64,000 bases of DNA from Macrostomum lignano (lineage: Eukaryota), in the NCBI GenBank assembly GCA_002269645.1, contig NIVC01000977.1, forward strand, positions 124,001 through 188,000. The letters are read 5' to 3'. The position numbers and the translations under genes are program-made. The first letter of the stretch is position 1; every line of letters begins with the position of its first letter. Below the pieces are notes generated by a model. The model did not search any database, was not told the DNA's origin, and was given only the letters and a program-made list of their open reading frames with translations. This document shows positions 9,001 to 27,600 of the stretch, in pieces.

Positions 9001-11806
9001 GCACGTCCGCCTTGCTCAACAGTTTCAAAGCGAACAGCTCCTGCGAGTCTTTCTTTCTAACTAATTGCACCTCGCCGTAGGCGCCTCGTCCGATCACTTT
9101 GATCAGCTCGAAGTCCGTGTATCGAATCCGCCAGCGCTTGATCTGCTTGGACAAGTCCTCGTACCTGCGAGGGTGGAATTGGTGACGGTGGGTTGAAGTG
9201 ACGTCCCTTTTCTAACTAGCCTTGTGACCCTGTGCTTGCATAGGTCACTTAAACCCACTGAAGGGCCTGAGGAAATGGCGGTAGACCCACTGAAGGGCCT
9301 GAGGAAATGGCGGTAGACCCACTGAAGGGCCTGAGGAAATGGCGGTAGACCCACTGAAGGGCCTGAGGAAATGGCGGTAGACCCACTGAAGGGCCTGAGG
9401 AAATGGCGGTAGACCCACTGAAGGGCCTGAGGAAATGGCGGTGTACACACTGAAGGGCCTGAGGAAATGGCGGTAGACCCACTGAAGGGCCTGAGGAAAT
9501 GGCGGTAGACCCACTGAAGGGCCTGAGGAAATGGCGGTAGACCCACTGAAGGGCCTGAGGAAATGGCGGTAGACCCACTGAAACCTGAGGAAATGGCGGT
9601 AGACCCATTGAATGAACTGAAATTCCTGTAGTTAATAGATTTCTTACTGGAAACTCGCTAATAATAGTATCATAGCGCGAGAGTAAATAACGCATTTAAA
9701 ATTATAAAAATAATCTAAATTTTACTTATACTTCAAAAGACAAATTTATCTCATAAAAGCAAAGGGCCCAGCATAAAGCATACGACCTTGGATAGAAGCA
9801 GAGAAAAGATCCAATTATTTGCCAGATTTATTTGAATAATGAAAATAGAAGAAGACTTGGACTGGCTGCAGGCAAGCAAATCTAGGAAAGTTTCTCTGGC
9901 TACAGAGCGATAGCAAAAGCAGAAATTTTAAAGAAATTATTGTAATTACTATTTTTATTAAGAGACCCAAGTTTGCGACTCCACAAACTTAAGCCGATGA
10001 GCGAAATTTGTGCTAAGCTAGAAGATATTGCGCATCGCAGCCTGAAATATTATAATTCTTTATATATATTCTTTGTTGCATGCTAAGCAGTTTAGGAAAT
10101 TTGTTTAAAAAACCAAATTCGTGACATCGGAGCAGATCGCAGTCTTTACCCTAAAGCGGAACTGGTTATTATCCGTTTCCTATCATTCTTCCTCGAATCA
10201 AAACAGAGTAACTAAGCTTAATACAATAGTAATGACCCTGGACTGCCGTCTGCCTCAGAGGGGCAGGCAAGGAAAGAACGCTTAGATACCAGACTAGCAT
10301 TGCAGGCCAATTAACAAACACAAGCGCCGGTCGAATTCTTGAAATAAATTGGGGCAGACTAGAACAGCGGGTAAGGCAACAGCGGCTGCATGGATACGAG
10401 ATATTGCATGGCCTCTAATGCATTGTGCGTGCGTTTCCAATGTACTTTTATTCTAACACATTTGGGAAGCTTAGGGACGTATGGGAAGGACTGAGAGACC
10501 ATAAACCAATCCACAGTCGAAGTCTATGGCGGCTAAACTGAGGACTCGGGAAGCAAATTGCGCCAAACTGAGGACTCGGGAAGCAAATGGCGCCAAACTG
10601 AGGACTCGGGAAGCAAATTGCGTCAAACTGAGGACTCGGGAAGCAAATGGCGCCAAACTGAGGACTCGGGAAGCAAATGGCGCCAAACTGAGGACTCGGG
10701 AAGCAAATGGCGCCAAACTGAGTACTCGGGAAGCAAATGGCGGCTAAACTGAGTACTCGGGAAGCAAATGGCGCCAAACTGAGGACTCGGGAAGCAAATG
10801 GCGCCAAACTGAGTACTCGGGAAGCAAATGGCGGCTAAACTGAGGACTCAGGAAGCAGATCGCCCTAAACTGAAAACTCGGGAAGCAAATGTCGCTAAAA
10901 TGAGGACTCGGGAAGCAAATGGCGCTAAAATGAGGACTCGGGAAGCAAAGGGCGCCAAACTGAGGACTCGGGAAGCAAATCGCGCCAAACTGAGGACTCG
11001 GGAAGCAAATGGCGCCAAACTGAGTACTCGGGAAGCAAATGGCGGCTAAACTGAGTACTCGGGAAGCAAATGGCGGCTAAACTGAGGACTCAGGAAGCAG
11101 ATCGCCCTAAACTGAGAACTCGGGAAGCAAATGTCGCTAAAATGAGGACTCGGGAAGCAAATGGCGGCTAAACTGAGGACTCAGGAAGCAAATCGCCCTA
11201 AACTGAGAACTCGGGAAGCAAATGTCGCTAAAATGAGGACTCGGGAAGCAAAGGGCGCCAAACTGAGGACTCGGGAAGCAAATCGCCCTAAACTGAGAAC
11301 TCGGGAAGCAAATGGCGCTAAACTGAAGATTAGGGAAGCAAAATGCGCTAAACTGAGAACTCGGGAAGCAAATCGCCCTAAAATGAGAACTCGGGAAGCA
11401 AAGGGCGCCAAACTGAGGACTCGGGAAGCAAATCGCCCTAAACTGAGAACTCGGGAAGCAAATCGCCCTAAACTGAAAACTCGGGAAGCAAATGGCGCTA
11501 AACTGAGAACTCGGGAAGCAAATGGCGCCAAACTCTGAGCTCTGGAAGCAAATGGCGCCAAACCGGAAACCACATTTAAACGCCATATTTGGTACACAAA
11601 CATTAAAAAGAGCAAAAATAGTATTTTACATTCACTCACCGTTCCAGAAACTGCGAGACATTCTTTGACTTTCGTATCAATGGATATTTCAAATCGTCGC
11701 ATAGGGCGCTAACGCAGTCTAGCAGGCTATCAATATTGATAGCTGAGCTATTGCGCAAAATCTCGGACTCAATAGCCTGCTGACCGCCTGTATTATTGCT
11801 GCTCAT
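1..11806 (-). CDS. ROCK: Rho-associated protein kinase (ROCK), spliced; 8 coding exons in window, 3' end runs off the window start
   Basis: Exons 11806-11640, 9164-8906, 7625-6550, 6155-5889, 5083-4631, 3193-2624, 1817-1271 and 289-<1 join via GT..AG with consistent phases (about 1209 codons in window). ROCK-type N-terminal dimerisation segment ([33 protein letters not shown]), AGC kinase motifs ([28 protein letters not shown]), long coiled coil, then a split PH domain interrupted by a C1 domain ([37 protein letters not shown]). Confidence 0.93.
290..1270. repeat. ROCK intron 7: two abutting 30-bp minisatellites
   Basis: About 312-728 unit TGGCATTGGGGTTGGCTCTGGGCCAAGCTG (some 32-bp variants); about 730-1148 unit AGGATTTGGGGCGATTTTGAAGCCACAGGT. 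Confidence 0.95.
2050..2535. repeat. ROCK intron 6: AT-rich 28-bp minisatellite with degenerate flanks
   Basis: Unit AATCAATGAATCAATAAATTAATAAACC repeated about 7 times, with ATGA/ATCA tetramer degenerate flanks. Confidence 0.9.
3228..4626. repeat. ROCK intron 5: ~40-bp minisatellite
   Basis: Unit GAGGTCACGAACCCGACACTCTCGGGTCACCAATCACACT, about 35 copies, running up to the splice donor. The unit contains an ACCCGA-N5-TCGGGT stem. Confidence 0.95.
5225..5845. repeat. ROCK intron 4: 25-bp minisatellite
   Basis: Unit GTCATGACCTTGTGAATAGTGTCAG alternating with the variant GTCACAATGTTGTGAATAGTGTCAG. Confidence 0.93.
6195..6500. repeat. ROCK intron 3: 23-bp minisatellite
   Basis: Unit CTACTCAGCCTCAATCTGAGCCC, about 13 copies. 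Confidence 0.95.
7735..8845. repeat. ROCK intron 2: 18-bp minisatellite
   Basis: Unit GGGATCAGAGTAGGTTAT, about 60 copies. It generates the spurious (LWDQSR)n ORF. Confidence 0.96.
9253..9610. repeat. ROCK intron 1: 32-bp minisatellite
   Basis: Unit CCCACTGAAGGGCCTGAGGAAATGGCGGTAGA, about 11 copies. Confidence 0.95.
10527..11570. repeat. ROCK intron 1: 30-bp minisatellite
   Basis: Unit GAGGACTCGGGAAGCAAATGGCGCCAAACT with occasional 32-bp variants. Confidence 0.95.
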
Positions 11807-12284: not shown

Positions 12285-13702
12285 CTACCCACTGCCAGGT
12301 CTCTACTCTCCCCTACCCTACTCTACCGGGTCTCTAATCTCATCTACCCACTGCCAGGTCTCTACTCTCCCCTACCCTACTCTACCGGGTCTCTAATCTC
12401 ACCTACCCACTGCCAGGTCTCTACTCTCCCCTACCCTAATCTACCGGGTCTCTAATCTCATCTACCCACTGCCAGGTCTCTACTCTCCCCTACCCTACTC
12501 TACCGGGTCTCTAATCTCACCTACCCACTGCCAGGTCTCTACTCTCCCTACCCTACTCTACCGGGTCTCTAATCTCACCTACCCACTGCCAAGTCTCTAC
12601 TCTCCCCTACCCTACTCTACCGGGTCTCTAATCTCATCTACCCACTGCCAGGTCTCTACTCTCCCCTACCCTACTCTACCGGGTCTCTAATCTCACCTAC
12701 CCACTGCCAGGTCTCTACTCTCCCCTACCCTACTCTACCGGGTCTCTAATCTCATCTACCCACTGCCAGGTCTCTACTCTCCCCTACCCTACTCTACCGG
12801 GTCTCTAATCTCATCTACCCACTGCCAGGTCTCTACTCTCCCCTACCCTACTCTACCGGGTCTCTAATCTCATCTACCCACTGCCAGGTCTCTACTCTCC
12901 CCTACCCTACTCTACCGGGTCTCTAATCTCATCTACCCACTGCCAGGTCTCTACTCTCCCCTACCCTACTCTACCGGGTCTCTAATCTCATCTACCCACT
13001 GCCAGGTCTCTACTCTCCCCTACCCTACTCTACCGGGTCTCTAATCTCACCTACCCACTGCCAGGTCTATACTCTCCCCTACCCTACTCTACCGGGTCTC
13101 TAATCTCACCTACCCACTGCCAAGTCTCTACTCTCCCCTACCCTACTCTACCGGGTCTCTAATCTCATCTACCCACTGCCAGGTCTCTACTCTCCCCTAC
13201 CCTACTCTACCGGGTCTCTAATCTCACCTACCCACTGCCAGGTCTCTACTCTCCCCTACCCTACTCTACCGGGTCTCTAATCTCACCTACCCACTGCCAG
13301 GTCTCTACTCTCCCCTACCCTACTCTACCGGGTCTCTAATCTCATCTACCCACTGCCAGGTCTCTACTCTCCCCTACCCTACTCTACCGGGTCTCTAATC
13401 TCATCTACCCACTGCCAGGTCTCTACTCTCCCCTACCCTACTCTACCGGGTCTCTAATCTCACCTACCCACTGCCAGGTCTCTACTCTCCCCTACCCTAC
13501 TCTACCGGGTCTCTAATCTCATCTACCCACTGCCAGGTCTCTACTCTCCCCTACCCTACTCTACCGGGTCTCTAATCTCATCTACCCACTGCCAGGTCTC
13601 TACTCTCCCCTACCCTACTCTACCGGGTCTCTAATCTCATCTACCCACTCTACCAGGTATCTACTCTCCCTTACTCTACTCTACCGGTCCTCTAATCTCA
13701 CC
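12285..13702. repeat. 59-bp minisatellite, left part (interrupted by the palindromic insertion)
   Basis: Unit CTACCCACTGCCAGGTCTCTACTCTCCCCTACCCTACTCTACCGGGTCTCTAATCTCA(C/T), about 24 homogeneous copies. Confidence 0.95.
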
Positions 13703-16700
13703 ACTACTATATGAACCCGTATCCGTTGATTTTGGAGGTGGGGTGGGTGTCAACCCTCCTCGCCTCTCATTGGCTGGCGCCCCGATCACTAGGTGATCGA
13801 TACCCGTATCGATATCGGCGCTCGGCGCGCGCGCGCGCCGCAGGCGCCAAGCGCCGCAGGCGACCCTCCCCAGCCGCAGGCGCACCTACCGATATTAGAT
13901 CCCAAATCAATCAGATCCCAAATCAATCAGATCCCAAATCAATCAGATCCCAAGCGCACCCTCCCGAGCCGCAGGCGTCCATGCAGCAGGCGCCCCTCCC
14001 CGCCGCACGCGCCCTCCCCCGACATGTATGCCGCAGGCGCCCTCCCCGTCTCAGGCGCCCCTCCCGATATGTATGCGCACTCTCCCTATATGTACACCGA
14101 TATGTATGCAGCAGGCGCCCCGAGTGTACACTCCCCCGATATGTGTGTACACCGATATGTAGTCATCGATACGGGCCTCTTCCCCTCTCTCACCTACATC
14201 TCAACTAGCGAAATCGAACCCAGGTCGCGCCCATACTAGGACACTACACGGTTGTGGGGTATAGGGAGCGAGAAGTTTCAACCCTAACGCTGACGCAGCC
14301 CTGTACAGTGAGAGTGTACGGGCAGAGAGGGGTGGCGCGGACAGAGAACCAGCCACTAGGTTGTTATACTGTTGAAGCATAGGGAGCGAGAAGTTTTAAC
14401 CCCGATGCTGACGCAGCCCTGTACACTGAGCGTGTACGGGCAGAGGGTGGGTGGAAAGAGATGTGAATAACACAGCCTGCTGCAGGAGCCGGATAGAGAG
14501 GCGCATGCTAGGACAGAGAGGTAGTGTGAGTCACACACACCCCACAGAGAAAGCCATACAGAGGATAGAGAGCTCCCTCCCCAGTTGCAGGGGACAGAGA
14601 GGCAGGCAGGGTATGCAGGGGCATGCGAACCGTCAAGGGGCCACGCGAGGATAGAGTGGAGGAGCAGAGATGTGTTTGGACAGAGAGCCAGCCACGTGTG
14701 CGTAGTGTGAGGGAACAGAAACATATGGAGCAGGAGGGAGATAGGAAGCAAACGCGCAGGGTAAGGGAGCCACACAGGGCGGTACAGTGAGACACGGGCA
14801 GGGGTGGAGCCGTGCGTGGACAGAGCTGAACGGCACGGTCAGCTGCAGGAATAGGATGATAGAGAGGCGCGGAGGGGGACAGAGAGCAGTGTGCAGGGGT
14901 AGGCAGCCACGCAGGCTGGGGAACAGAGAGGCGCGTGTCAGCCAGTTGCAGCCCGGGACAGAGAAGTATGAAGGGGGGCCTGGGACAGAGTTCCGAGCAA
15001 GGCACAGAGGTAGGGTCCTGTAGCTATGTATAGGCAGGGAGCCACGCGAGGGCAGGACAGGGGAGCAGACATGCAAGTTGCATGCAAGGCCAGAGAGGTG
15101 TGCGCGGAGGGAGACAGAGAGCAGTGTGTAGGGGTAGGTAACAGCAAACTTTAGTAGCGGCGCGTGCGGGGACGGAGAAACCAGTCAGAGCATACAGAGA
15201 CGTTACAGAGAGGTACACAAGCAGAGACCAAAGCGAGCAGAGCACATGTGTAGGGACAGAGACGTGAGGGAGAATCGACCAAAACACGCTATGTATTTTC
15301 AAAAGTTGGTTTTAGTGCAACATGTTTAATAGTGGGTAGTATAATAGTATGTACATAGTAGGTATAATAGTAGTAATAATAGTAAGCATATTAGCCCAAA
15401 AGGTAGACTAAAACAGGCTAAACTGTGTGTACGCATCCTCATCACCCCACAAGCCCCCTCTCCCGCCAGACTCACTCTACCAAACCCTCCTGTATTGCTG
15501 CATGAAGGAAAATATAGTGTAAAAATACAGATCTTAACCGTCAGACCGCTGAAATCAGGGCACACTAGAGGGGGTTTCGGGGTCTGCATGCTCTATGTAA
15601 GCTGCTTGAGGAGGTTCCAAGGGCGTTGTGAGGGTTTCCATTATGTTTTGAAAAAAACTAGAGGCTTAAATACAACGTTTTATTCAAAAGTAGGTTATTT
15701 TAATGAAATAGCTGACACAATCATTGTCGAGAGTAGAAATTTTTATAAGAAACCAGGCATTTTAGCAAAAATAAACCTTCAAACCACATAAAATTGAATA
15801 AAAAGCAGACATTTTCAATTATAAACCGCAAGTATTTTAATAGAAAAGTAAGCAAACAAGGCACAAAACCAGCAAATTTTACCTTTTTATTTTAATGTTA
15901 CTGATAAGGTAGAGAGTAGAAACTTGTGAGCTGTACGGAGTTAGAAAGTATTAACCATTATGTATCGTATGAATTATTAGTTCAGTACCAGCCATTGGTC
16001 AAGCGAGCATTTATGAAGTTATTACGAGTGATGAAGGGATAGAGAGCTATATACAGGAAGACAGTATCCTTCTAAACCACCACGAACAGATTGCTAATAG
16101 AGATAAGCTTTGTCTGTGTGCAGTATGAGTAAGCGAAGGCGGGGCAAATACTTTTCCACATGCCGGACAGAACAGTATTGTGCTAGGATTTCTCTCGAAA
16201 TCGCGGTACGTTACTAGTTTTTATCACACCATCCAGATGCGTCAACTAGTCAGCAGTAGTCATTTATATGTTATTAGAACTTACAAACCCAGGTCAAGTA
16301 AATATTACAAAGAGTATATTACGTACACACACCAACTACGAATACCAAGCCATACTAGTCTACTTGCAGTGCTCCTGGAGGGAAGGGACGGCGGGGTGTA
16401 CATCCGGCAGGGTGGGCGTCCAGCGAGTGTACATCTGACAGGATGGGTGTTCAGCAAGTGTACATCTGACAGGGTGGGCGTTCAGCAAGTGTACCTTCAG
16501 CGTCGAGTAGGTGTACACCCGTCAGTGGGAACTCAGCCCCTCCCACCAATGTCGTGTGCATGCGGTTAGTCAGTATAGTGGTGGGGTAGACGGTGCAGGA
16601 AGGAAACCCAGATGCTGACGCTGCCCTGTACAGCGAGCAACCAGCCCTCCTGTAGCAGGAGGGGGACAGAGAGTGCGTGGAGGCAGTAGGAGATAGAGGA

Positions 16701-18264
16701 CGCTACCCGGCATGTCGCAGCACGCGGCGCGGGACAGAGAGGCAGTGTGTAAGTCACCCCCACAGGGAGAGCTGCCCTGGCAGGAGGCGCGGGACAGAGA
16801 GGCGGTGAATCACACCCCACGGAGAGAGCCGTACAGCGAGCTTCCCCACCCGAGTCCGGTAAATATTACAGAGTATTACGTGCACACGCCAGCCCTGAAT
16901 ACCAAGCCATACTAGTCTACCTGCAGTGCTCCCAGAGGGAAGGGATGGTCAGGAGTTACACACCAAGAATGCATTCATACAAAGAGTACACAACTCGAGC
17001 CCAGACACCAAGTCACAGTCTACTTACAGTAGAGATGGTAGATTAATAGCAAGATTATATTACAATTAGACCTCCCTAGCACATGAGGAGTGAAATTCAA
17101 TAATAATTGAATTCAATAATAATACAACATTTAGACGTAGTAATTTAATTACAAAATACCACTAACACTGAGCCAACGAATTGTAGGTTACAAAGGAGTT
17201 GCCACTCATATGGAAAGCCAGTATAATGCAGGTGTATATTATTAAAACATAGACAAAAACGATGCAGACGTATATACACACTATTGATTTTGTACATGTA
17301 CATTTCGGCATATTACCACACATCGCAGGCACATATTATATATCGGGGGATAGGTTAAAATACACACATCGTAGATGTAGAAGCAGACACAATGCAGGAA
17401 AATTATGATACGAGTGTACATATTAGTGCGTAAAAGTATCATATTATGACACCCTGTAGCACATATTGACATAATGCAGGGGAAAATATTGACAGAAATA
17501 GTACACAATTGTAGAGGTAACAACCCGCCAACTAGTAAGGACATCCAGCACTTGTTCAGGTTTTTATTATTTCGAGACGAGTGTCATGCCCCCGCAAGAG
17601 ATCTTATCAGAAATTTGTTGAACTCCACTGCAACTCTCCCCAGAGCCTCCAAATGTGAGTTTTTAACCCAGGGTCGAGTACAAAGGACCCGCCCACTCTT
17701 AACCCCAAGGGGTGATCGTAGCGGAGACCAAGTACAGTGCGGACGGAGAGGGGTAACAGAAAGCGCTGCATCAGACCGCAGGGCTGCATTCCTCCCCCGA
17801 GGTAGGCGCGTCAGCTCCCACTCCTCATTTAACCATCAAGTAAACTAAAGAAGTCAAGCAGAAAGCCTTACAATCACCCGCAACCAGCACAAGTAAGAGT
17901 ACTTTCCACTAGAGAGCCATAGTGCAAGATTCGCGAGCCAAGTTGAAGAAGCACACCAAATTACACTAAAGACATATGTATTAAAAAGCATACCGGCACC
18001 TCTACAAAAACACAGTATGTACCGATTAAAGTTGCTTTTGGTGCAGTGTATTTAATAAAAAGCAGGTACCTAACACAAAAGTAGGCATCAATGCAGTGCA
18101 CGGACTAAACTGTATTTACAAACGCAGGGCAACGAACTACACACAATGTAGCGCATAGACATAATTGTACGCATAAATGTACGCAATTTCCGGTATATAG
18201 GACCACATGTACGCAAATGTACACAATGTACACAAACAAACACACACACACACAAACACAAACA

Positions 18265-18303
<39 letters not shown>

Positions 18304-18390
18304 AGGCGTATCCTGCAGAGCGCATCCTGCAGCGCCGATCGCCGCAGGCGATGGCGCCATCGGCAGGAAGCTCTTGCTGTGAATACGCCT

Positions 18391-18439
<49 letters not shown>

Positions 18440-21400
18440 TGTTTGTGTGTGTGTGTGTTTGTTTGTGTACATTGTGTACATTTGCGTACATGTGGTCCTA
18501 TATACCGGAAATTGCGTACATTTATGCGTACAATTATGTCTATGCGCTACATTGTGTGTAGTTCGTTGCCCTGCGTTTGTAAATACAGTTTAGTCCGTGC
18601 ACTGCATTGATGCCTACTTTTGTGTTAGGTACCTGCTTTTTATTAAATACACTGCACCAAAAGCAACTTTAATCGGTACATACTGTGTTTTTGTAGAGGT
18701 GCCGGTATGCTTTTTAATACATATGTCTTTAGTGTAATTTGGTGTGCTTCTTCAACTTGGCTCGCGAATCTTGCACTATGGCTCTCTAGTGGAAAGTACT
18801 CTTACTTGTGCTGGTTGCGGGTGATTGTAAGGCTTTCTGCTTGACTTCTTTAGTTTACTTGATGGTTAAATGAGGAGTGGGAGCTGACGCGCCTACCTCG
18901 GGGAGGAATGCAGCCCTGCGGTCTGATGCAGCGCTTTCTGTTACCCCTCTCCGTCCGCACTGTACTTGGTCTCCGCTACGATCACCCCTTGGGGTTAAGA
19001 GTGGGCGGGTCCTTTGTACTCGACCCTGGGTTAAAAACTCACATTTGGAGGCTCTGGGGAGAGTTGCAGTGGAGTTCAACAAATTTCTGATAAGATCTCT
19101 TGCGGGGGCATGACACTCGTCTCGAAATAATAAAAACCTGAACAAGTGCTGGATGTCCTTACTAGTTGGCGGGTTGTTACCTCTACAATTGTGTACTATT
19201 TCTGTCAATATTTTCCCCTGCATTATGTCAATATGTGCTACAGGGTGTCATAATATGATACTTTTACGCACTAATATGTACACTCGTATCATAATTTTCC
19301 TGCATTGTGTCTGCTTCTACATCTACGATGTGTGTATTTTAACCTATCCCCCGATATATAATATGTGCCTGCGATGTGTGGTAATATGCCGAAATGTACA
19401 TGTACAAAATCAATAGTGTGTATATACGTCTGCATCGTTTTTGTCTATGTTTTAATAATATACACCTGCATTATACTGGCTTTCCATATGAGTGGCAACT
19501 CCTTTGTAACCTACAATTCGTTGGCTCAGTGTTAGTGGTATTTTGTAATTAAATTACTACGTCTAAATGTTGTATTATTATTGAATTCAATTATTATTGA
19601 ATTTCACTCCTCATGTGCTAGGGAGGTCTAATTGTAATATAATCTTGCTATTAATCTACCATCTCTACTGTAAGTAGACTGTGACTTGGTGTCTGGGCTC
19701 GAGTTGTGTACTCTTTGTATGAATGCATTCTTGGTGTGTAACTCCTGACCATCCCTTCCCTCTGGGAGCACTGCAGGTAGACTAGTATGGCTTGGTATTC
19801 AGGGCTGGCGTGTGCACGTAATACTCTGTAATATTTACCGGACTCGGGTGGGGAAGCTCGCTGTACGGCTCTCTCCGTGGGGTGTGATTCACCGCCTCTC
19901 TGTCCCGCGCCTCCTGCCAGGGCAGCTCTCCCTGTGGGGGTGACTTACACACTGCCTCTCTGTCCCGCGCCGCGTGCTGCGACATGCCGGGTAGCGTCCT
20001 CTATCTCCTACTGCCTCCACGCACTCTCTGTCCCCCTCCTGCTACAGGAGGGCTGGTTGCTCGCTGTACAGGGCAGCGTCAGCATCTGGGTTTCCTTCCT
20101 GCACCGTCTACCCCACCACTATACTGACTAACCGCATGCACACGACATTGGTGGGAGGGGCTGAGTTCCCACTGACGGGTGTACACCTACTCGACGCTGA
20201 AGGTACACTTGCTGAACGCCCACCCTGTCAGATGTACACTTGCTGAACACCCATCCTGTCAGATGTACACTCGCTGGACGCCCACCCTGCCGGATGTACA
20301 CCCCGCCGTCCCTTCCCTCCAGGAGCACTGCAAGTAGACTAGTATGGCTTGGTATTCGTAGTTGGTGTGTGTACGTAATATACTCTTTGTAATATTTACT
20401 TGACCTGGGTTTGTAAGTTCTAATAACATATAAATGACTACTGCTGACTAGTTGACGCATCTGGATGGTGTGATAAAAACTAGTAACGTACCGCGATTTC
20501 GAGAGAAATCCTAGCACAATACTGTTCTGTCCGGCATGTGGAAAAGTATTTGCCCCGCCTTCGCTTACTCATACTGCACACAGACAAAGCTTATCTCTAT
20601 TAGCAATCTGTTCGTGGTGGTTTAGAAGGATACTGTCTTCCTGTATATAGCTCTCTATCCCTTCATCACTCGTAATAACTTCATAAATGCTCGCTTGACC
20701 AATGGCTGGTACTGAACTAATAATTCATACGATACATAATGGTTAATACTTTCTAACTCCGTACAGCTCACAAGTTTCTACTCTCTACCTTATCAGTAAC
20801 ATTAAAATAAAAAGGTAAAATTTGCTGGTTTTGTGCCTTGTTTGCTTACTTTTCTATTAAAATACTTGCGGTTTATAATTGAAAATGTCTGCTTTTTATT
20901 CAATTTTATGTGGTTTGAAGGTTTATTTTTGCTAAAATGCCTGGTTTCTTATAAAAATTTCTACTCTCGACAATGATTGTGTCAGCTATTTCATTAAAAT
21001 AACCTACTTTTGAATAAAACGTTGTATTTAAGCCTCTAGTTTTTTTCAAAACATAATGGAAACCCTCACAACGCCCTTGGAACCTCCTCAAGCAGCTTAC
21101 ATAGAGCATGCAGACCCCGAAACCCCCTCTAGTGTGCCCTGATTTCAGCGGTCTGACGGTTAAGATCTGTATTTTTACACTATATTTTCCTTCATGCAGC
21201 AATACAGGAGGGTTTGGTAGAGTGAGTCTGGCGGGAGAGGGGGCTTGTGGGGTGATGAGGATGCGTACACACAGTTTAGCCTGTTTTAGTCTACCTTTTG
21301 GGCTAATATGCTTACTATTATTACTACTATTATACCTACTATGTACATACTATTATACTACCCACTATTAAACATGTTGCACTAAAACCAACTTTTGAAA

Positions 21401-22993
21401 ATACATAGCGTGTTTTGGTCGATTCTCCCTCACGTCTCTGTCCCTACACATGTGCTCTGCTCGCTTTGGTCTCTGCTTGTGTACCTCTCTGTAACGTCTC
21501 TGTATGCTCTGACTGGTTTCTCCGTCCCCGCACGCGCCGCTACTAAAGTTTGCTGTTACCTACCCCTACACACTGCTCTCTGTCTCCCTCCGCGCACACC
21601 TCTCTGGCCTTGCATGCAACTTGCATGTCTGCTCCCCTGTCCTGCCCTCGCGTGGCTCCCTGCCTATACATAGCTACAGGACCCTACCTCTGTGCCTTGC
21701 TCGGAACTCTGTCCCAGGCCCCCCTTCATACTTCTCTGTCCCGGGCTGCAACTGGCTGACACGCGCCTCTCTGTTCCCCAGCCTGCGTGGCTGCCTACCC
21801 CTGCACACTGCTCTCTGTCCCCCTCCGCGCCTCTCTATCATCCTATTCCTGCAGCTGACCGTGCCGTTCAGCTCTGTCCACGCACGGCTCCACCCCTGCC
21901 CGTGTCTCACTGTACCGCCCTGTGTGGCTCCCTTACCCTGCGCGTTTGCTTCCTATCTCCCTCCTGCTCCATATGTTTCTGTTCCCTCACACTACGCACA
22001 CGTGGCTGGCTCTCTGTCCAAACACATCTCTGCTCCTCCACTCTATCCTCGCGTGGCCCCTTGACGGTTCGCATGCCCCTGCATACCCTGCCTGCCTCTC
22101 TGTCCCCTGCAACTGGGGAGGGAGCTCTCTATCCTCTGTATGGCTTTCTCTGTGGGGTGTGTGTGACTCACACTACCTCTCTGTCCTAGCATGCGCCTCT
22201 CTATCCGGCTCCTGCAGCAGGCTGTGTTATTCACATCTCTTTCCACCCACCCTCTGCCCGTACACGCTCAGTGTACAGGGCTGCGTCAGCATCGGGGTTA
22301 AAACTTCTCGCTCCCTATGCTTCAACAGTATAACAACCTAGTGGCTGGTTCTCTGTCCGCGCCACCCCTCTCTGCCCGTACACTCTCACTGTACAGGGCT
22401 GCGTCAGCGTTAGGGTTGAAACTTCTCGCTCCCTATACCCCACAACCGTGTAGTGTCCTAGTATGGGCGCGACCTGGGTTCGATTTCGCTAGTTGAGATG
22501 TAGGTGAGAGAGGGGAAGAGGCCCGTATCGATGACTACATATCGGTGTACACACATATCGGGGGAGTGTACACTCGGGCGCCTGCTGCATACATATCGGT
22601 GTACATATAGGGAGAGTGCGCATACATATCGGGAGGGGCGCCTGAGACGGGGAGGGCGCCTGCGGCATACATGTCGGGGGAGGGCGCGTGCGGCGGGGAG
22701 GGGCGCCTGCTGCATGGACGCCTGCGGCTCGGGAGGGTGCGCTTGGGATCTGATTGATTTGGGATCTGATTGATTTGGGATCTGATTGATTTGGGATCTG
22801 ATTGATTTATTGGGATCTAATATCGGGAGGGTGCGCCTGCGGCGCTTGGCGCCTGCGGCGCGCGCGCGCGCCGAGCGCCGATATCGATACGGGTATCGAT
22901 CACCTAGTGATCGGGGCGCCAGCCAATGAGAGGCGAGGAGGGTTGACACCCACCCCACCTCCAAAATCAACGGATACGGGTTCATATAGTAGT
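13703..22993. mobile_element. 9.3-kb fully palindromic (fold-back) inserted element with 6-bp TSD; family unknown, Polinton-like ends, apparently non-autonomous
   Basis: Left arm 13703-18311 is the reverse complement of right arm 18383-22993; mirror ORF pairs have coordinates summing to 36697 from 14356 to 17607. Termini ACTACTATATGAACCCG...CGGGTTCATATAGTAGT. Flanked by direct repeat CTCACC (13697-13702 and 22994-22999). The uninterrupted target context is present at about 23101-23150. No ORF over 175 aa and no recognisable domain. Confidence 0.8.
18312..18382. other. Central 71-bp imperfect hairpin/spacer of the giant palindrome
   Basis: Non-mirrored segment CCTGCAGAGCGCATCCTGCAGCGCCGATCGCCGCAGGCGATGGCGCCATCGGCAGGAAGCTCTTGCTGTGA between arm ends ...CTCAGGCGTAT and ATACGCCTGAG..., flanked by (CA)n/(TG)n tracts. 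Confidence 0.85.
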
Positions 22994-23680
22994 CTCACCT
23001 ACTCACTCTACCCGGTTCTATACTCCTCCCTACCCTACTCTACCGGGTCTCTAATCTCATCTACCCACTCTACCAGGTATCTACTCTCCCTTACTCTACT
23101 CTACCGGTCCTCTAATCTCACCTACTCACTCTACCCGGTTCTATACTCTTTCCTACCCTACTCTACCGGGTCTCTAATCTGATCTACCTAATCTATCAGG
23201 TCTCTACTCTCCCCTACCCTACTCTACCGGTCCTCTAATCTCACCTACCCACTCTACCTGGTTCTCTACTCTCCCCTACCCTACTCTACCGGGCCTCTAA
23301 TCTCACATAATCACTCTACCAGGTCTCTACTCTCCCTTACCCTACTCTACCGGGTCTCTAATCTGATCTACCTAATCTATCAGGTCTCTACTCTCCCCTA
23401 CCCTACTCTACCGGGTCTCTAATCTCACCTACCCACTGCCAGGTCTCTACTCTCCCCTACCCTACTGTACCGGGTCTCTAATCTCACCTACCCACTCTAC
23501 CTGGTTCTCTACTCTCCCCTACCCTACTCTACCGGGCCTCTAATCTCACATAATCACTCTACCAGGTCTCTACTCTCCCTTACCCTACTCTACCGGGTCT
23601 CTAATCTGATCTACCTAATCTATCAGGTCTCTACTCTCCCCTATCCTACTCTGCCGGGTCTGTAACCCTCTATCCCACTC
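22994..23680. repeat. 59-bp minisatellite, right part (more diverged variants)
   Basis: Same unit family as 12285-13702 resuming immediately after the TSD. Confidence 0.92.
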
Positions 23681-24162
23681 TACTCTCCTTTTTCCACAGC
23701 TTCTAACGTTGACGCATTTTTTTAACTTACACTTTTGAACTAATACAATGTAAATATTAATAGAAAATGACCAAGTCAGAAACTTCCCGGAAAATGCATC
23801 CGACAAGCGAACGGAAATGTACCATTTTTATTTGAATCAATTTTTCTTTTCTCTGTTCTTCAAAGCAAATTGCGAAACACAGCGAACGTATCTGGCATTT
23901 ATCAACATCGAATGACTGGCTTATTAAGCAAGCGCAAGTGTTTCGGCTCACCATCGAAACAAACAACATAAAAACTGCAGCTGCTGCTGAAATCGAAATT
24001 TAACAATATAATTAACCAGGTATGTCTGAAAATAGAATTCACGATGCAGGTAGCTACTTACGTATTCCTCGAATTATAGGATATAAGGAAATCCAGAGAG
24101 ATAGCTAGAAGAGACTTTCTGCCTTTTTTGTCAGAAGTAAGTTCAACAGTTCAATTCAAAGC

Positions 24163-24440
24163 GCGAGTTGTATCCCATAGGACCCGAGCTCGATTCCAGA
24201 CATGCCATAGGACCCGAGCTCGATTCCAGACATGCCATAGGACCCGAGCTCGATTCCAGACATGCCATAGGACCCGAGCTCGATTCCAGACATGCCATAG
24301 GACCCGAGCTTGATTCCAGACATGCCATAGGACCCGAGCTCGATTCCAGACATGCCATAGGACCCGAGCTCGATTCCAGACATGCCATAGGACCCGAGCT
24401 TGATTCCAGACATCCCATAGGACCCGAGCTCTATTCCAGG
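24163..24440. repeat. 30-bp minisatellite downstream of the eIF2B gamma stop codon
   Basis: Unit ATAGGACCCGAGCTCGATTCCAGACATGCC, about 9 copies. Confidence 0.95.
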
Positions 24441-24605
24441 TATCAAATAGAATTCCAATTCGATTTTAAGGCGAGATAATTGTTTGGGATGCTATTAAAA
24501 TTTTGGAAAATTTAAATCTCTAGAGACTTCGAGACAACTTTGCTGTATTAGGAAGCATTTAAAACAAGATTTTCCTGTCAGATCAAACCGCCACCATTTT
24601 AAATC

Positions 24606-27600
24606 TCAGGTGGCAAAATCTGCGTCGCTAATAACCTCAGCGGCGTGAGTAGAGCCAGCGTTGACGGAGCAATCGGCCTCAACGATACAGTCGCGCAGAG
24701 TGCAGCCATCCTGACAGGCGGAGCCGGAGCACAGGATGGAATTAGTGAGATTAGCGCCGCAGCCAACGCTGGCTCCGTCCATCAGAACGCAATCGGCTAG
24801 CCGGCTATTAGCGCCAATAGTACAATTGGCGCCAATGAAACTGCGCTTAATAACGGCGCCGTCGGCTATGCTGGCGGTGGGATTAATGGGTTGAATTTGC
24901 TGTTGCTGTTGTTGCTTTCGCTGTTGACTGCGCAATAAAGATCGATTAGCCTCAGCGTAAGCTGGCAGATTATTGACTCTTAAACAGAGCCTATCAGCTG
25001 GCAGCACGTAGGCAAACACCTGGCGAGTGTTGCGAACATCAAAAGCGCCGCCGTAGCTGTCGGATTGATTGAGAATAGTTGGCCAAGCTAGCCGATCATC
25101 TTGGTTTTGTTGAGAAGATTTCTGCTCCTGCTGCTGTTGTTGTTGCTTCTGCTGCGGCTGCTGTTGCTTCTGCTGCTGCTCGTCCTGCTGCGGCAGCAGC
25201 AGATCTTGCGAGTCTTGACTGAACTGCAGACTATTAACAATGTGCGGCAGGCACTCGCCTTTGAACATTGCCAACCGGTTTAATCGGCCAGACACGCACA
25301 GCGTGTGCAAGAAGTCGCGGCGCAGAATGTACAGGTGAGCGTCCAACAGGCAGCGGAGAAAGTCTAAGCAGTGTCCGAACTGCTCGTTCTGCAGGCTGGC
25401 CAGGTGAACTGGCAATCGGCGGCCCAGGTCCGCTTCGCCTTGCATGAACACCACTCGGTGCTCGCCCTGCGGAATTAAGAGGGTAATTGAATGCTTAATG
25501 GGGAATTCGAAGCCGATTTGAAGGCTGGTGTATCAGGTGTAATTACGCCATTCTAAACCTGTTTATCAGGTGTAATTAGACCGACTAAAGCTGTTTATCA
25601 GGTGTAATTAGGCCGATTCTAAAGCTGTTTATCAGGTGTAATTAGGCCGATTCTAAACCTGTTTATCAGGTGTAATTAGGCCATTCTAAACCTGTTTATC
25701 AGGTGTAATTAGGCCGATTCTAAAGCTGTTTATCAGGTGTAATTAGGCCGATTCTAAAGCTGTTTATCAGGTGTAATTAGGCCGATTCTAAAGCTGTTTA
25801 TCAGGTGTAATTAGGCCGATTATAAAGCAGTTTATCAGGTGTAATTAGGCCATTCTAAAGCTGTTTATCAGGTGTAATTAGGCCGATTCTGAACCTGTTT
25901 ATCAGGTGTAATTAGACCGACTCTAAAGCTGTTTATCAGGTGTAATTAGACCGACTCTAAAGCTGTTTATCAGGTGTAATTAGGCCGACTCTAAAGCTGT
26001 TTATCAGGTGTAATTAGGCCGATTCTAAAGCTGTTTATCAGGTGTAATTAGCAAGATTCTATGGCGGTGTAATAAGGTGTATTTAGGCCTTTTCTAACGT
26101 TGTTTATCAGGTGTTATTAGGAAGATTCTAAGACAGTTTCGACAGGTGAAATTATATGGAGATTATAAGCCAGTAGGTTGACTGTATGCCCCTTTTGATA
26201 AGCGTAGGCAAGCGCGCACCTGTACATAGTTGCACTCGGCAAGTTGAGCGGATGTGGCTGGCGGATGCGGCCCACTTGGCGCGGGAGCCAATCCGATCAG
26301 ATCCCGATCTGGCTTCGACTTCACTTTGCCCCCAGGTGTGGCCGCCTGCGGCTGCTGCTGCTGTTGCTTTTGTTGCTGCTCGGAGAGAGGCGTGCGGTTG
26401 CTAAGCAACATAGTCAACGGACAGAGTCGCTTATCGTGCACATCGGTAACTGATCTCAATAGGCCGGTGTCGCACAATAAATCGCCGCTGATAATGACAA
26501 TATTATCGGCCCTGGCCCGGTCGCCATAGTCTCGCAGGGCGTCCATAGTGCCATGCGCATCCTCTTCGCGCTGTTCAAGGTACTCAAAAACGCCAGCTGC
26601 AGCTGCATCGGGGAAAAGCCGCTCCATCCATGCTTGAACGTCGTTCCTTCAATGGAATTTGTTTTTTGGAGAGGTCAGGAGTTGTTGACTAGCAGACTAG
26701 TCTCTCCTTCTCATCCTGTCTCTCTCTCACTGTCTATCCCTCTCAGTCTCTCTCTCCCCCTGTCTCTCTCTCATTGTCTCTCCCTCTCACTGTCTCTCTC
26801 TCTCACTAGCTCTCCCTCTCATTAGCTCTCCTTCTCACTGTCTCTCTCTCCCCGTCTCTCTCTCACTGTCTCTCCCTCGTCTCTCCCTCTCACTAGCTCT
26901 CCCTCTCACTGTCTCTCTCTCTCACTGTCTCTCCCCCCGTCTCTCCCTCTCACTGTCTCTCTCTCACTGTCTCTCCCTCGTCTCTCCCTCTCACTGTCTC
27001 TCTCTCCCCGTCTCTCTCTCACTGTCTCTCCCTCGTCTCTCCCTCTCACTAGCTCTCCCTCTCACTGTCTCTCTCTCACTGTCTCTCCCTCTCACTGTCT
27101 CTCTCTCACTGTCTCTCCCTCTCACTGTCTCTCCCCCCCCGTCTCTCCCTCTCACTAGCTCTCCCTCTCACTGTCTCTCTCCCCCGTCTCTCCCTCTCAC
27201 TAGCTCTCCCTCTCACTGTCTCTCCCCCCGTCTCTCCCTCTCACTAGCTCTCCCTCTCACTGTCTCTCTCTCCCCCGTCTCTCCCTCTCACTAGCTCTCC
27301 CTCTCACTGTCTCTCTCTCTCACTGTCTCTCTCTCTCACTGTCTCTCTCTCCCCCGTCTCTCTCTCCCCCGTCTCTCTCTCCCCCGTCTCTCCCTCTCAC
27401 TAGCTCTCCCTCTCACTGTCTCTCTCTCCCCCGTCTCTCCCTCTCACTGTCTCTCTCTCTCACTGTCTCTCCCTCGTCTCTCCCTCTCACTAGCTCTCCC
27501 TCTCACTGTCTCTCTCTCTCACTGTCTCTCCCCCCGTCTCTCCCTCTCACTGTCTCTCTCTCACTGTCTCTCCCTCGTCTCTCCCTCTCACTGTCTCTCT

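What the first reader, a model, noticed from the sequence alone, without database searches (positions are those of the whole stretch)
13703..22993. 9.3-kb fully palindromic inserted element with a 6-bp target-site duplication and no coding capacity
Seen: two ~4.6-kb arms (13703-18311 and 18383-22993) are reverse complements with no net indel over more than 3 kb (mirror ORF coordinates all sum to 36697), separated by only 71 bp. The element is bracketed by CTCACC direct repeats. The intact target context (CTACCGGTCCTCTAATCTCACCTACTCACTCTACCCGG) occurs at about 23101-23140, so the TSD is a true duplication. Known: 6-bp TSDs are characteristic of Polinton/Maverick retroviral-type integrases; hAT, P and MULE elements give 8-9 bp. 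Typical TIRs are tens to ~1.5 kb and flank a coding core. Inference: this is a mobile DNA made entirely of inverted repeat. It could be the opened head-to-head dimer of a ~4.6-kb linear replicon with one hairpin end and one free end, integrated by a helper integrase in trans. I do not recognise any described family with this layout.
Basis: partly seen in the sequence, partly recalled or inferred. Interest (0 to 1): 0.92.

Follow-up and report, generated by a model that had tools for sequence, protein, structure and literature searches.

The report
Palindromic foldback transposon in a flatworm
A real 9.3-kb insertion in the flatworm Macrostomum lignano is a non-coding mobile element made almost entirely of two mirror-image 4.6-kb arms; this "foldback" layout is already known, but the arms are unusually long and the ends look like those of virus-like Maverick elements.

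Summary
Window 13703-18311 and 18383-22993 are inverted copies, 99.5% identical, with one 3,679-nt stretch at 100%. They are 71 bp apart and flanked by CTCACC on both sides. The window is Macrostomum lignano assembly Mlig_3_7, contig NIVC01000977.1. The element lies in a 59-61-bp satellite between an MRCK-like kinase gene and eIF2B-gamma. Joining the two flanks with one CTCACC matches a neighbouring satellite unit at 81 of 83 positions. The paralogous locus on NIVC01000176.1 has the satellite but none of the element. None of the 85 open frames of one arm matches Pfam or PHROGs.

It is best read as a non-autonomous foldback-type DNA element inserted as one unit by an enzyme supplied in trans. 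Its arms are modular, with subterminal motif arrays. What is unusual is the 4.6-kb arms of mostly complex sequence, the 6-bp duplication, and termini of the form 5'-(ACT)2A...T(AGT)2-3'. That form is used to map Mavericks, but there is no Maverick gene remnant and no partner element was found. Copy number could not be tested, because no searchable eukaryote DNA collection was available. Verdict: new variant of a known kind, moderate interest.

The parts
12285..13696 (.). Host satellite (59-bp unit, about 24 copies), left of the insertion
   Evidence: TRF. The same satellite is present in diverged form at the paralogous locus L001.
13697..13702 (.). Left copy of the 6-bp target-site duplication, CTCACC
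13703..22993 (.). Whole element, 9,291 bp, GC 0.49, palindromic from end to end
13703..13709 (+). Left terminus ACTACTA = (ACT)2A. Its mirror TAGTAGT lies at 22987-22993.
   Evidence: The form is compared with Maverick end-motifs in PMC8097293.
13703..18311 (+). Left arm, 4,609 bp
13784..14175 (+). Subterminal motif region. It holds short palindromes (GATCACTAGGTGATC at 13784, ATCGATACCCGTATCGAT at 13796), (GC)n at 13825, GCCGCAGGCG x5, a 16-bp unit x3.6 (13897-13953), a 46-bp unit x2.1 (13981-14076) and CCGATATGT x4. These are candidate protein-binding arrays (inference).
14251..15262 (+). Degenerate GGGACAGAGAG-type repeat block, including a ~118-bp direct repeat (14261-14332 / 14379-14450). 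A second block lies at 16570-16830.
   Evidence: (I8, I9).
16396..16494 (+). 31-bp tandem repeat x3.2 inside the arm
18230..18301 (+). (AC)n-rich microsatellite next to the axis. Its mirror (GT)n at 18393-18468 is 4 nt longer.
   Evidence: The sub-threshold Rfam mir-3149 match here is an artefact of this hairpin.
18312..18382 (.). Central 71-bp segment, GC 0.68. It is a degenerate palindrome with its midpoint near 18347 and carries a sixth copy of the subterminal decamer GCCGCAGGCG at 18341-18350.
18383..22993 (-). Right arm, 4,611 bp, reverse complement of the left arm
22994..22999 (.). Right copy of the 6-bp target-site duplication, CTCACC
23000..23665 (.). Host satellite continuing to the right of the insertion (61/123-bp higher-order units)
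23081..23163 (+). Uninterrupted satellite unit that matches the expected empty site at 81 of 83 positions

Best explanation
It is a real and probably recent insertion of a non-autonomous, non-coding DNA element with foldback architecture. Two 4.6-kb arms mirror each other through a degenerate palindromic centre. The element sits in an intergenic satellite of Macrostomum lignano.

Shown: the palindrome, the precise symmetric ends, the 6-bp duplication of the target, the absence of the element from the paralogous locus, the modular arms with subterminal short-motif arrays, and the lack of any recognisable protein domain.

Inferred: (1) The element was integrated as one unit by an enzyme made elsewhere in the genome. 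That enzyme recognises the two identical ends and joins them to target phosphates staggered by 6 bp. (2) The enzyme family is unresolved. A retroviral-type integrase of a Maverick/Polinton-like element is the single best candidate, about 0.3 absolute, because of the 6-bp duplication and the iterated A-first termini. (3) The palindrome arose when one end of a progenitor was copied back on itself. This could be fold-back priming or a template switch at the short GC-rich palindrome now at the axis. The product carries two identical ends and can still be recognised in trans. (4) The near-identity of the arms reflects youth, or homogenisation between arms.
For: Palindrome and ends.

True TSD and intact target unit.

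Empty paralogous locus: L001 (NIVC01000176.1) is collinear on both sides at about 84-94% identity, carries the satellite, and has no BLAST hit to the arm.

The window is an assembled M. lignano contig: L002 is 100% identical over 24,793 bp.

No coding capacity.

Foldback-type composite arms: compared with the descriptions in PMC4079207, PMC3573991 and PMC3169594.

The arms are physically distinct sequences. They differ by structured repeat-copy changes within 200 bp of each junction (one extra ~19-bp GC motif on the left, one extra degenerate 16-bp unit on the right) and by microsatellite length. A single fold-back read would not give this.

The axis is a degenerate palindrome carrying the element's own subterminal decamer.

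Maverick lead: a 6-bp TSD is characteristic of Polinton (PMC10045372; PMC3014272). The iterated end-motifs, their proposed jumping-back role, and an AC-type variant are described in PMC8097293. Iterated 6-mers make up only about 2-4% of positions in the arm itself.
Against: Only one copy was seen, so a family, its copy number and other TSDs could not be examined. The tools hold no searchable eukaryote DNA collection.

No autonomous partner was found.

A single TSD does not fix the enzyme's characteristic stagger.

The termini are not letter-for-letter any described Maverick motif.

The arms contain no remnant of polymerase, integrase, ATPase, protease or capsid genes. Such remnants would be expected if 4.6 kb of one Maverick end had simply been doubled.

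Arm identity may be inflated by short-read polishing of the PacBio assembly (Canu plus Pilon; PMC5730564).
Confidence: 0.68

Rival explanations
1. This is a nested refinement of the best explanation, not a strict competitor. The element is a defective, non-coding dependant of a Maverick/Polinton-like virus-like element. It would be a head-to-head doubling of one genome end that keeps only the cis signals: the iterated termini used in protein-primed replication and the ends recognised by the integrase. It would be replicated and/or integrated by the helper's proteins.
For: Among described eukaryotic DNA-element groups, a 6-bp TSD is characteristic of Polinton and of IS3EU/GingerRoot (PMC10045372).

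The termini 5'-(ACT)2A...T(AGT)2-3' have the same form as the (AGT)2, (AG)3 and (AC)3A end-motifs of vertebrate Mavericks. Those repeats are proposed to serve jumping-back in protein-primed replication (PMC8097293).

A chance iterated terminus has a probability of about 2-4%.

From memory, not verified here: defective genomes of protein-primed linear replicons are classically inverted doublings of one end. Examples are adenovirus incomplete-particle DNA and the pGKL1-derived hairpin and palindromic plasmids of yeast.
Against: No Maverick gene remnant is present in any of the 85 frames.

The terminal letters match none of the three described motif types.

No paper retrieved reports Mavericks in Macrostomum, and I could not query the genome for them.

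Non-autonomous Polinton copies were reported as apparently absent in the one genome where I read a statement about them (anole, PMC3014272), so the prior is low.

No match to the termini exists in IMG/VR or JGI metagenome contigs.
Confidence: 0.3
2. An ordinary TIR element with short inverted ends and a unique core inserted here and made the 6-bp duplication. The palindrome formed afterwards in place, when one half was replaced by an inverted copy of the other through a fold-back or template-switch repair event or intra-element conversion.
For: Only this copy is known. The arms show no substitutions in about 4.4 kb of complex sequence, as expected for a very recent local event. The axis lies in a short GC-rich palindrome that could prime a fold-back.
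Against: This needs two rare events at one site. Both outer junctions are exactly symmetric, and the whole length is symmetric including the centre. The structured repeat differences near both ends show some independent history of the arms after the doubling.
Confidence: 0.12
3. Assembly artefact. The inner part of the palindrome was created by fold-back chimeric PacBio reads or by the assembler, around a real but smaller insertion.
For: Mlig_3_7 is a Canu assembly of early PacBio reads, polished with Pilon, from a very repetitive, triplicated genome that is known to be hard to assemble (PMC5730564; PMC10733133). Polishing can homogenise inverted copies.
Against: Both outer junctions join the same satellite in register with a TSD. 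An artefactual fold-back does not restore the flank in this way. The arms differ by structured repeat-copy changes, not only by homopolymer errors. The centre is a diverged palindrome rather than an abrupt turn-around.
Confidence: 0.07
4. Integration without a transposase. An extrachromosomal palindromic DNA, for example the replicated product of a hairpin-capped broken end, was captured at a staggered chromosome break by end joining, and fill-in produced the 6-bp duplication.
For: A single insertion with a short duplication does not by itself prove transposase action. Palindromic dimers are a known product of hairpin-capped breaks (from memory).
Against: The two ends stop at exactly the same nucleotide of the mirror sequence, and no filler or deleted bases are visible at either junction. 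The ends also carry organised subterminal motif arrays. This points to defined, recognised termini.
Confidence: 0.08
5. Local inverted duplication of unique host DNA, not a mobile element.
For: None beyond the fact that only one copy was seen.
Against: The paralogous locus has the flanking genes and the satellite but no sequence of either arm. The block interrupts a satellite unit and duplicates 6 bp of it.
Confidence: 0.02

Closest known systems
Galileo 'two-TIR' (2T) copies, P superfamily, Drosophila
   Same: They are non-autonomous copies made essentially of two long TIRs that are internally repetitive. The longest TIRs occur in non-coding copies, and tandem repeats inside the TIRs carry extra transposase-binding sites (PMC3573991; PMC4079207).
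   Different: Galileo TIRs reach about 1.26 kb, against 4.6 kb here. Its TSD is 7 bp, against 6 bp here. Its transposase is known, and none is known here. Most of each arm here is complex, non-tandem sequence.
Foldback elements in the strict sense (Drosophila FB, Tetris, Tm1, FARE, sea-urchin TU)
   Same: They have composite TIRs with outer, repeat and inner domains, little or no middle domain and no coding capacity in most copies. The layout is thought to have arisen independently in several superfamilies by TIR elongation (PMC4079207; PMC3169594).
   Different: Their TSDs are 8-10 bp (Tetris) or 9 bp (Tm1), and most are assigned to Mutator. Tetris TIRs reach up to 1,735 bp. The element here has a 6-bp TSD and no middle domain at all, since even its centre is palindromic.
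Maverick / Polinton virus-like elements
   Same: They have a perfect 6-bp TSD, TIRs, and a short unit starting with A that is iterated at the very ends (PMC8097293; PMC3014272).
   Different: Mavericks are 12.7-24.6 kb, have TIRs of 46-1,447 bp and carry about eight conserved genes. The element here is 9.3 kb, is all TIR and has no gene or gene remnant. Its end letters differ from the described motifs.
IS3EU / GingerRoot
   Same: The TSD is usually 6 bp (PMC10045372).
   Different: Complete families have TA..TA termini. This element has AC..GT.
Palindromic defective genomes of protein-primed linear replicons (adenovirus incomplete-particle DNA; pGKL1-derived hairpin and palindromic plasmids), recalled from memory and not verified with the tools
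   Same: They are inverted doublings of one genome end that keep only the terminal cis signals and depend on a helper.
   Different: Those are extrachromosomal molecules. The object here is integrated in a chromosome with a TSD, and no link to such a replicon has been shown.

Membership tests
Foldback-type elements (a structural class, not a superfamily) | Long TIRs make up most or all of the element, with a small or absent middle domain | tested here: met
   The arms are 4,609 and 4,611 bp of a 9,291-bp element, and the 71-bp centre is itself palindromic.
Foldback-type elements (a structural class, not a superfamily) | Composite TIRs with several domains and internal tandem or short-motif repeats | tested here: met
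   16-, 31- and 46-bp tandem repeats, decamer and nonamer arrays, and GGGACAGAGAG blocks. However, about half of each arm is complex AT-rich sequence.
Foldback-type elements (a structural class, not a superfamily) | Flanked by a target-site duplication | tested here: met
   CTCACC on both sides, and the expected empty site is matched at 81 of 83 positions. The length (6 bp) differs from FB, Tetris and Tm1 (8-10 bp) and from Galileo (7 bp).
Foldback-type elements (a structural class, not a superfamily) | A dispersed family of copies in the genome | not testable with these tools
   There is no eukaryote DNA collection to search. Only the window and two 24-kb loci of this genome could be read, and they hold one copy.
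Maverick / Polinton | Perfect 6-bp target-site duplication | tested here: met
   The criterion comes from PMC8097293 and PMC10045372.
Maverick / Polinton | Terminal inverted repeats | tested here: met
Maverick / Polinton | Iterated end-motif: 5'-(AGT)2//(ACT)2-3', 5'-(AG)3//(CT)3-3' or 5'-(AC)3A//T(GT)3-3' | tested here: inconclusive
   The ends read 5'-(ACT)2A//T(AGT)2-3'. The form is the same, but the letters match none of the described types.
Maverick / Polinton | Encodes a protein-primed polymerase, retroviral-type integrase, ATPase, protease and capsid proteins | tested here: not met
   None of the 85 frames has a Pfam domain. It could at most be a non-autonomous dependant.
Maverick / Polinton | An autonomous element with the same termini in the same genome | not testable with these tools
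   No way to search the M. lignano assembly by DNA. No paper retrieved reports Mavericks in Macrostomum.
IS3EU / GingerRoot | TA..TA (rarely TG..CA) termini with a 6-bp TSD | tested here: not met
   The TSD length fits, but the termini are AC..GT. The criterion comes from PMC10045372.
Dada | Inserted in multicopy small RNA genes, with a short TSD and no TIRs | tested here: not met
   The target is a 59-61-bp satellite with no Rfam or tRNA match, and the element has TIRs. The criteria come from PMC3706591.
P superfamily (Galileo-like) | 7-bp TSD | tested here: inconclusive
   TCTCACC can be read on both sides only if the two ends are offset by one base. The 6-bp reading with perfectly symmetric ends is simpler.
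Mutator / FB superfamily | 8-10-bp TSD | tested here: not met
   The 8 bases on the two sides are ATCTCACC and CTCACCTA.

The most novel reading that the evidence does not exclude
The element is the integrated form of a gene-less, palindromic 'defective genome' that parasitises a Maverick/Polinton-like virus-like element of flatworms. It would be a doubling of one genome end that keeps only the iterated replication termini and the integrase recognition ends. That would make it the first described non-coding satellite of this class of elements in an animal genome.
Probability: 0.3. Interest if true: 0.75.

Novelty: new variant of a known kind. Interest (0 to 1): 0.5.

Why it matters
If the family is confirmed, it extends the foldback layout in three ways. 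The arms are about three times longer than the longest TIRs in the comparators I could read (1.26-1.74 kb). The arms are mostly complex sequence. The integration signature (6-bp duplication, iterated A-first termini) has so far been tied to Maverick/Polinton elements, not to the Mutator or P groups that hold known foldback elements.

That would give a concrete, sequence-level handle on two open questions. One is whether virus-like Mavericks have non-coding dependants, as adenoviruses and linear plasmids do. The other is how whole-element palindromes arise.

Two practical points follow from general knowledge. A 9.3-kb perfect palindrome is a likely site of fragility and of assembly error in a model-organism genome. 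If it is transcribed, it would form a 4.6-kb double-stranded RNA able to feed small-RNA silencing of its relatives.

Tried and rejected
1. Searches for other copies or relatives all came back empty:
- Exact look-ups of window frames.
- Homologue searches with the terminal frame and an inner frame.
- IMG/VR scans with two terminal patterns.
- One JGI metagenome scan.
- blastn of a whole arm against plasmids and phages.
The protein collection appears to hold only the NCBI-annotated proteins of this species, so these negatives say little about copy number.

2. The representative-library search with frame 15348-15788 gave two marginal hits (E about 1e-4). Both are multi-stretch matches to translated tandem repeats, so I rejected them as homology.

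3. The Rfam mir-3149 match at the axis scores 62 bits against a gathering score of 100. It is the (AC)n/(GT)n hairpin and was rejected.

4. Alternative end readings were rejected. A CACTA-type start (CACTACTA) needs a mismatched first base and gives unequal 3-bp flanks. An 8-bp TSD does not hold. A TA..TA start does not give matching flanks.

5. The idea that each arm is a complete element with its own inverted ends was rejected, because the outer terminus does not recur at the inner end.

6. The idea of two independent head-to-head insertions was rejected. The 71-bp centre is not satellite sequence, and only the outer ends carry a shared duplication.

7. Classification by a partner transposase was impossible. 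The window encodes no DNA transposase. The only mobile-element protein signal found is an LTR-retrotransposon integrase zinc-binding domain at 39088-39720.


Full report
**Where the window comes from**

A 282-aa frame at 24606-25454(-) is 99% identical to M. lignano protein BOX15_Mlig026045g1, an eIF2B-gamma. The second member of that cluster is PAA74095.1. It is encoded on NIVC01000977.1 of assembly GCA_002269645.1 (Mlig_3_7), and that locus (L002) is 100% identical to window 14606-39398 over 24,793 bp. The window is therefore part of the published PacBio/Canu/Pilon assembly of the inbred DV1 line (PMC5730564). That genome is more than half repetitive and is assembled as about three paralogous copies (PMC10733133).

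**The observation**

The two arms are 13703-18311 and 18383-22993.
- They are inverted copies at 99.48% identity, with one uninterrupted 3,679-nt block at 100%.
- The 23-nt terminus occurs exactly twice in the window, once at each end in inverted orientation. None is expected by chance.
- The arms differ in only four ways: a rearranged tandem-repeat tract 160-195 bp from each end, two single-C homopolymer indels, the length of the (AC)n tract by the axis (72 vs 76 nt), and one mismatch inside that tract.
- There are no substitutions in about 4.4 kb of complex sequence.
- In the rearranged tract, the left arm has one extra ~19-bp GC motif and the right arm has one extra degenerate 16-bp unit, with the same net length.

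**Insertion and target-site duplication**

- The element interrupts a 59-61-bp satellite (12285-13700 and 22993-23665).
- CTCACC lies directly outside both ends.
- Left flank plus one CTCACC plus right flank (83 nt) matches the neighbouring uninterrupted unit at 23081-23163 with 2 substitutions.
- The context TAATCTCACC|TAC occurs intact 13 times in the array, and the doubled hexamer never occurs.
- The duplication is therefore real and cannot be explained by the satellite period.
- A 7-bp reading needs the ends to be offset by one base. The 3-, 4- and 8-bp readings fail.

**Empty site**

Locus L001 (NIVC01000176.1) is the paralogous copy of the region. It is collinear with the window on both sides, at about 84-94% identity in the aligned blocks. 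It carries a diverged form of the same satellite and runs straight from it into the sequence that follows the element in the window. A BLAST of the arm against its 23.7 kb finds nothing. The space between the annotated kinase gene and eIF2B-gamma is 2.3 kb there and about 12.7 kb in the window; the element accounts for 9.3 kb of the difference. Neither arm is therefore ancestral sequence at this locus.

**Coding capacity**

- The ten longest frames have no Pfam match at E<=1.
- All 85 stop-to-stop frames of at least 35 aa in one arm plus the centre have no Pfam match better than E=0.05 and no PHROG match.
- Two frames have no homologue in the 5.8-billion-protein collection.
- A third frame gives only marginal, multi-stretch matches to translated tandem repeats.
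- No gene is annotated across window 14606-24605, which covers the right arm and most of the left arm.
- Rfam finds only a sub-threshold match caused by the (AC)n/(GT)n hairpin.
- There is no DNA similarity to plasmids or phages.

**Anatomy of an arm**

From the outside in:
- the terminus ACTACTA;
- about 130 bp of unique GC-rich sequence with two short palindromes (13784, 13796) and a recurring CCGTATC motif;
- (GC)n at 13825;
- a 340-bp region packed with GCCGCAGGCG (x5), a 16-bp unit (x3.6-4.1), a 46-bp unit (x2.1) and CCGATATGT (x4);
- a 1-kb block of degenerate GGGACAGAGAG-type repeats;
- AT-rich complex sequence (GC 0.38);
- a 31-bp repeat and a second GGGACAGAGAG block, bracketed by a ~100-bp direct repeat;
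- more AT-rich complex sequence (GC 0.41);
- (AC)n;
- the centre.

**The centre**

The 71-bp centre is not a unique loop. It is a degenerate palindrome: its self-reverse-complement score is 18 against -4.2 +/- 6.1 for shuffles, reached by 3 of 2000. It also carries a sixth copy of the subterminal decamer GCCGCAGGCG right on the axis, at 18341-18350. The symmetry therefore runs through the whole element and has decayed only at the axis.

**What it is**

The layout is that of foldback elements. It has very long composite TIRs with internal repeats, no coding capacity, a TSD and essentially no middle domain. [quoted passage not shown] Galileo has a named class of 'two-TIR' copies, and its longest TIRs (1.26 kb) are found in non-coding copies (PMC3573991).

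Three things are different here:
- the arm length (4.6 kb, against 1.26 kb for Galileo, 1.74 kb for Tetris and at most 1.45 kb for Maverick TIRs);
- the fact that about half of each arm is complex rather than tandem sequence;
- the 6-bp duplication, whereas known foldback families give 7 bp (P/Galileo) or 8-10 bp (Mutator-type).

**Which enzyme**

Among the described groups I could document:
- Polinton/Maverick makes 6-bp duplications.
- IS3EU/GingerRoot also makes 6-bp duplications, but its termini are TA..TA, which is not met here.
- Dada makes 6-7-bp duplications, but it has no TIRs and targets small RNA genes, which is not met here.

Vertebrate Mavericks are mapped by TIRs, a perfect 6-bp TSD and an iterated end-motif: 5'-(AGT)2//(ACT)2-3', 5'-(AG)3//(CT)3-3', or in one fish 5'-(AC)3A//T(GT)3-3'. 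These repeats are thought to allow jumping-back in protein-primed replication (PMC8097293). The element here reads 5'-(ACT)2A//T(AGT)2-3', which is the same form with different letters. Iterated hexamers make up about 2-4% of positions in the arm, so this is moderate evidence, not proof.

Four points count against a Maverick link:
- No gene remnant is present.
- The size is outside the Maverick range.
- I retrieved no report of Mavericks in Macrostomum.
- Non-autonomous Polintons were noted as apparently absent in the anole genome.

I put the Maverick-dependent reading at about 0.3.

**How the palindrome arose (inference)**

An element needs only its two ends to be moved in trans. If one end of a progenitor is copied back on itself, the product has two identical ends. 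The copying could happen by fold-back priming or by a template switch at a short inverted repeat. The axis lies in a GC-rich short palindrome related to the element's own subterminal array. This fits a fold-back inside the far-end array of a progenitor of about 4.6-4.8 kb. Only monomer copies in the genome could test this.

Decay of symmetry at the axis is what is generally expected for long palindromes, which are unstable until the centre becomes asymmetric (from memory). The lack of substitutions between the arms means the doubling is young, or the arms are kept alike by conversion, or short-read polishing has homogenised them.

**Rivals**

- In-situ formation after insertion of an ordinary element (0.12) cannot be excluded with one copy.
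- An assembly artefact (0.07) is unlikely. Both junctions restore the satellite in register with a duplication, the arms differ by structured repeat changes close to each junction, and the centre is a diverged palindrome.
- Capture of a free palindromic fragment by end joining (0.08) is disfavoured by the exactly symmetric ends and the organised subterminal arrays.
- A local inverted duplication of host DNA (0.02) is contradicted by the empty paralogue.

**Limits**

The tools gave access to this genome only through annotated proteins. I could read 64 kb plus two loci of 24 kb each, and they hold a single copy. Copy number, other duplications, the helper element and read-level support are therefore all untested.

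**Verdict**

The element is a new variant of a known kind, and interest is 0.5.

Noticed in passing
window 18341-18350 (also 13837, 13853, 13873, 13968, 14030): The decamer GCCGCAGGCG, otherwise confined to the subterminal 340 bp of the arm, recurs once exactly on the symmetry axis. This hints that the centre derives from a subterminal repeat array.
   Followed up: partly
L001 (NIVC01000176.1:463032-486741) vs window 5000-30000: The paralogous locus is collinear but differs mostly by large indels in satellites. The intergenic distance between the kinase gene and eIF2B-gamma is 2.3 kb there and 12.7 kb here. Aligned blocks are about 84-94% identical, clearly below the ~98% small-scale identity reported genome-wide for paralogues.
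   Followed up: partly
window 7516-8851, 10526-11563, 24175-24439, 25512-26131, 26700-28941, 49700-51700, 59412-60038: The window has an exceptionally high density of distinct satellites and minisatellites. Several create long spurious open frames, for example 562 aa at 50007-51695.
   Followed up: no
window 39088-39720 (-): A remnant of an LTR retrotransposon. The frame carries an Integrase_H2C2 zinc-binding domain (E 1.4e-07), and the neighbouring frames 38310-39128 have no Pfam match.
   Followed up: partly
window 16290-16395 and 16850-16950: A direct repeat of about 100 bp (about 87% identical) inside each arm brackets the 31-bp tandem repeat and a GGGACAGAGAG block. It may be an internal duplication or a small nested insertion.
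   Followed up: no
window about 14198-14250 (-): A short string resembling a tRNA T-arm (GGTTCGA-type) lies just inside the subterminal region. ARAGORN and Rfam report nothing, so it may be chance or a SINE-like fragment.
   Followed up: partly
window 57163-57873 (+), 51912-52649 (+), 6531-7607 (-): The neighbouring host genes look ordinary: a phosphoethanolamine-methyltransferase-like exon, a casein-kinase-I-like exon that runs out of a coding-looking repeat, and the kinase domain of an MRCK-like kinase. These are named from the frame translations and from the Pfam list of the paralogue's gene.
   Followed up: no
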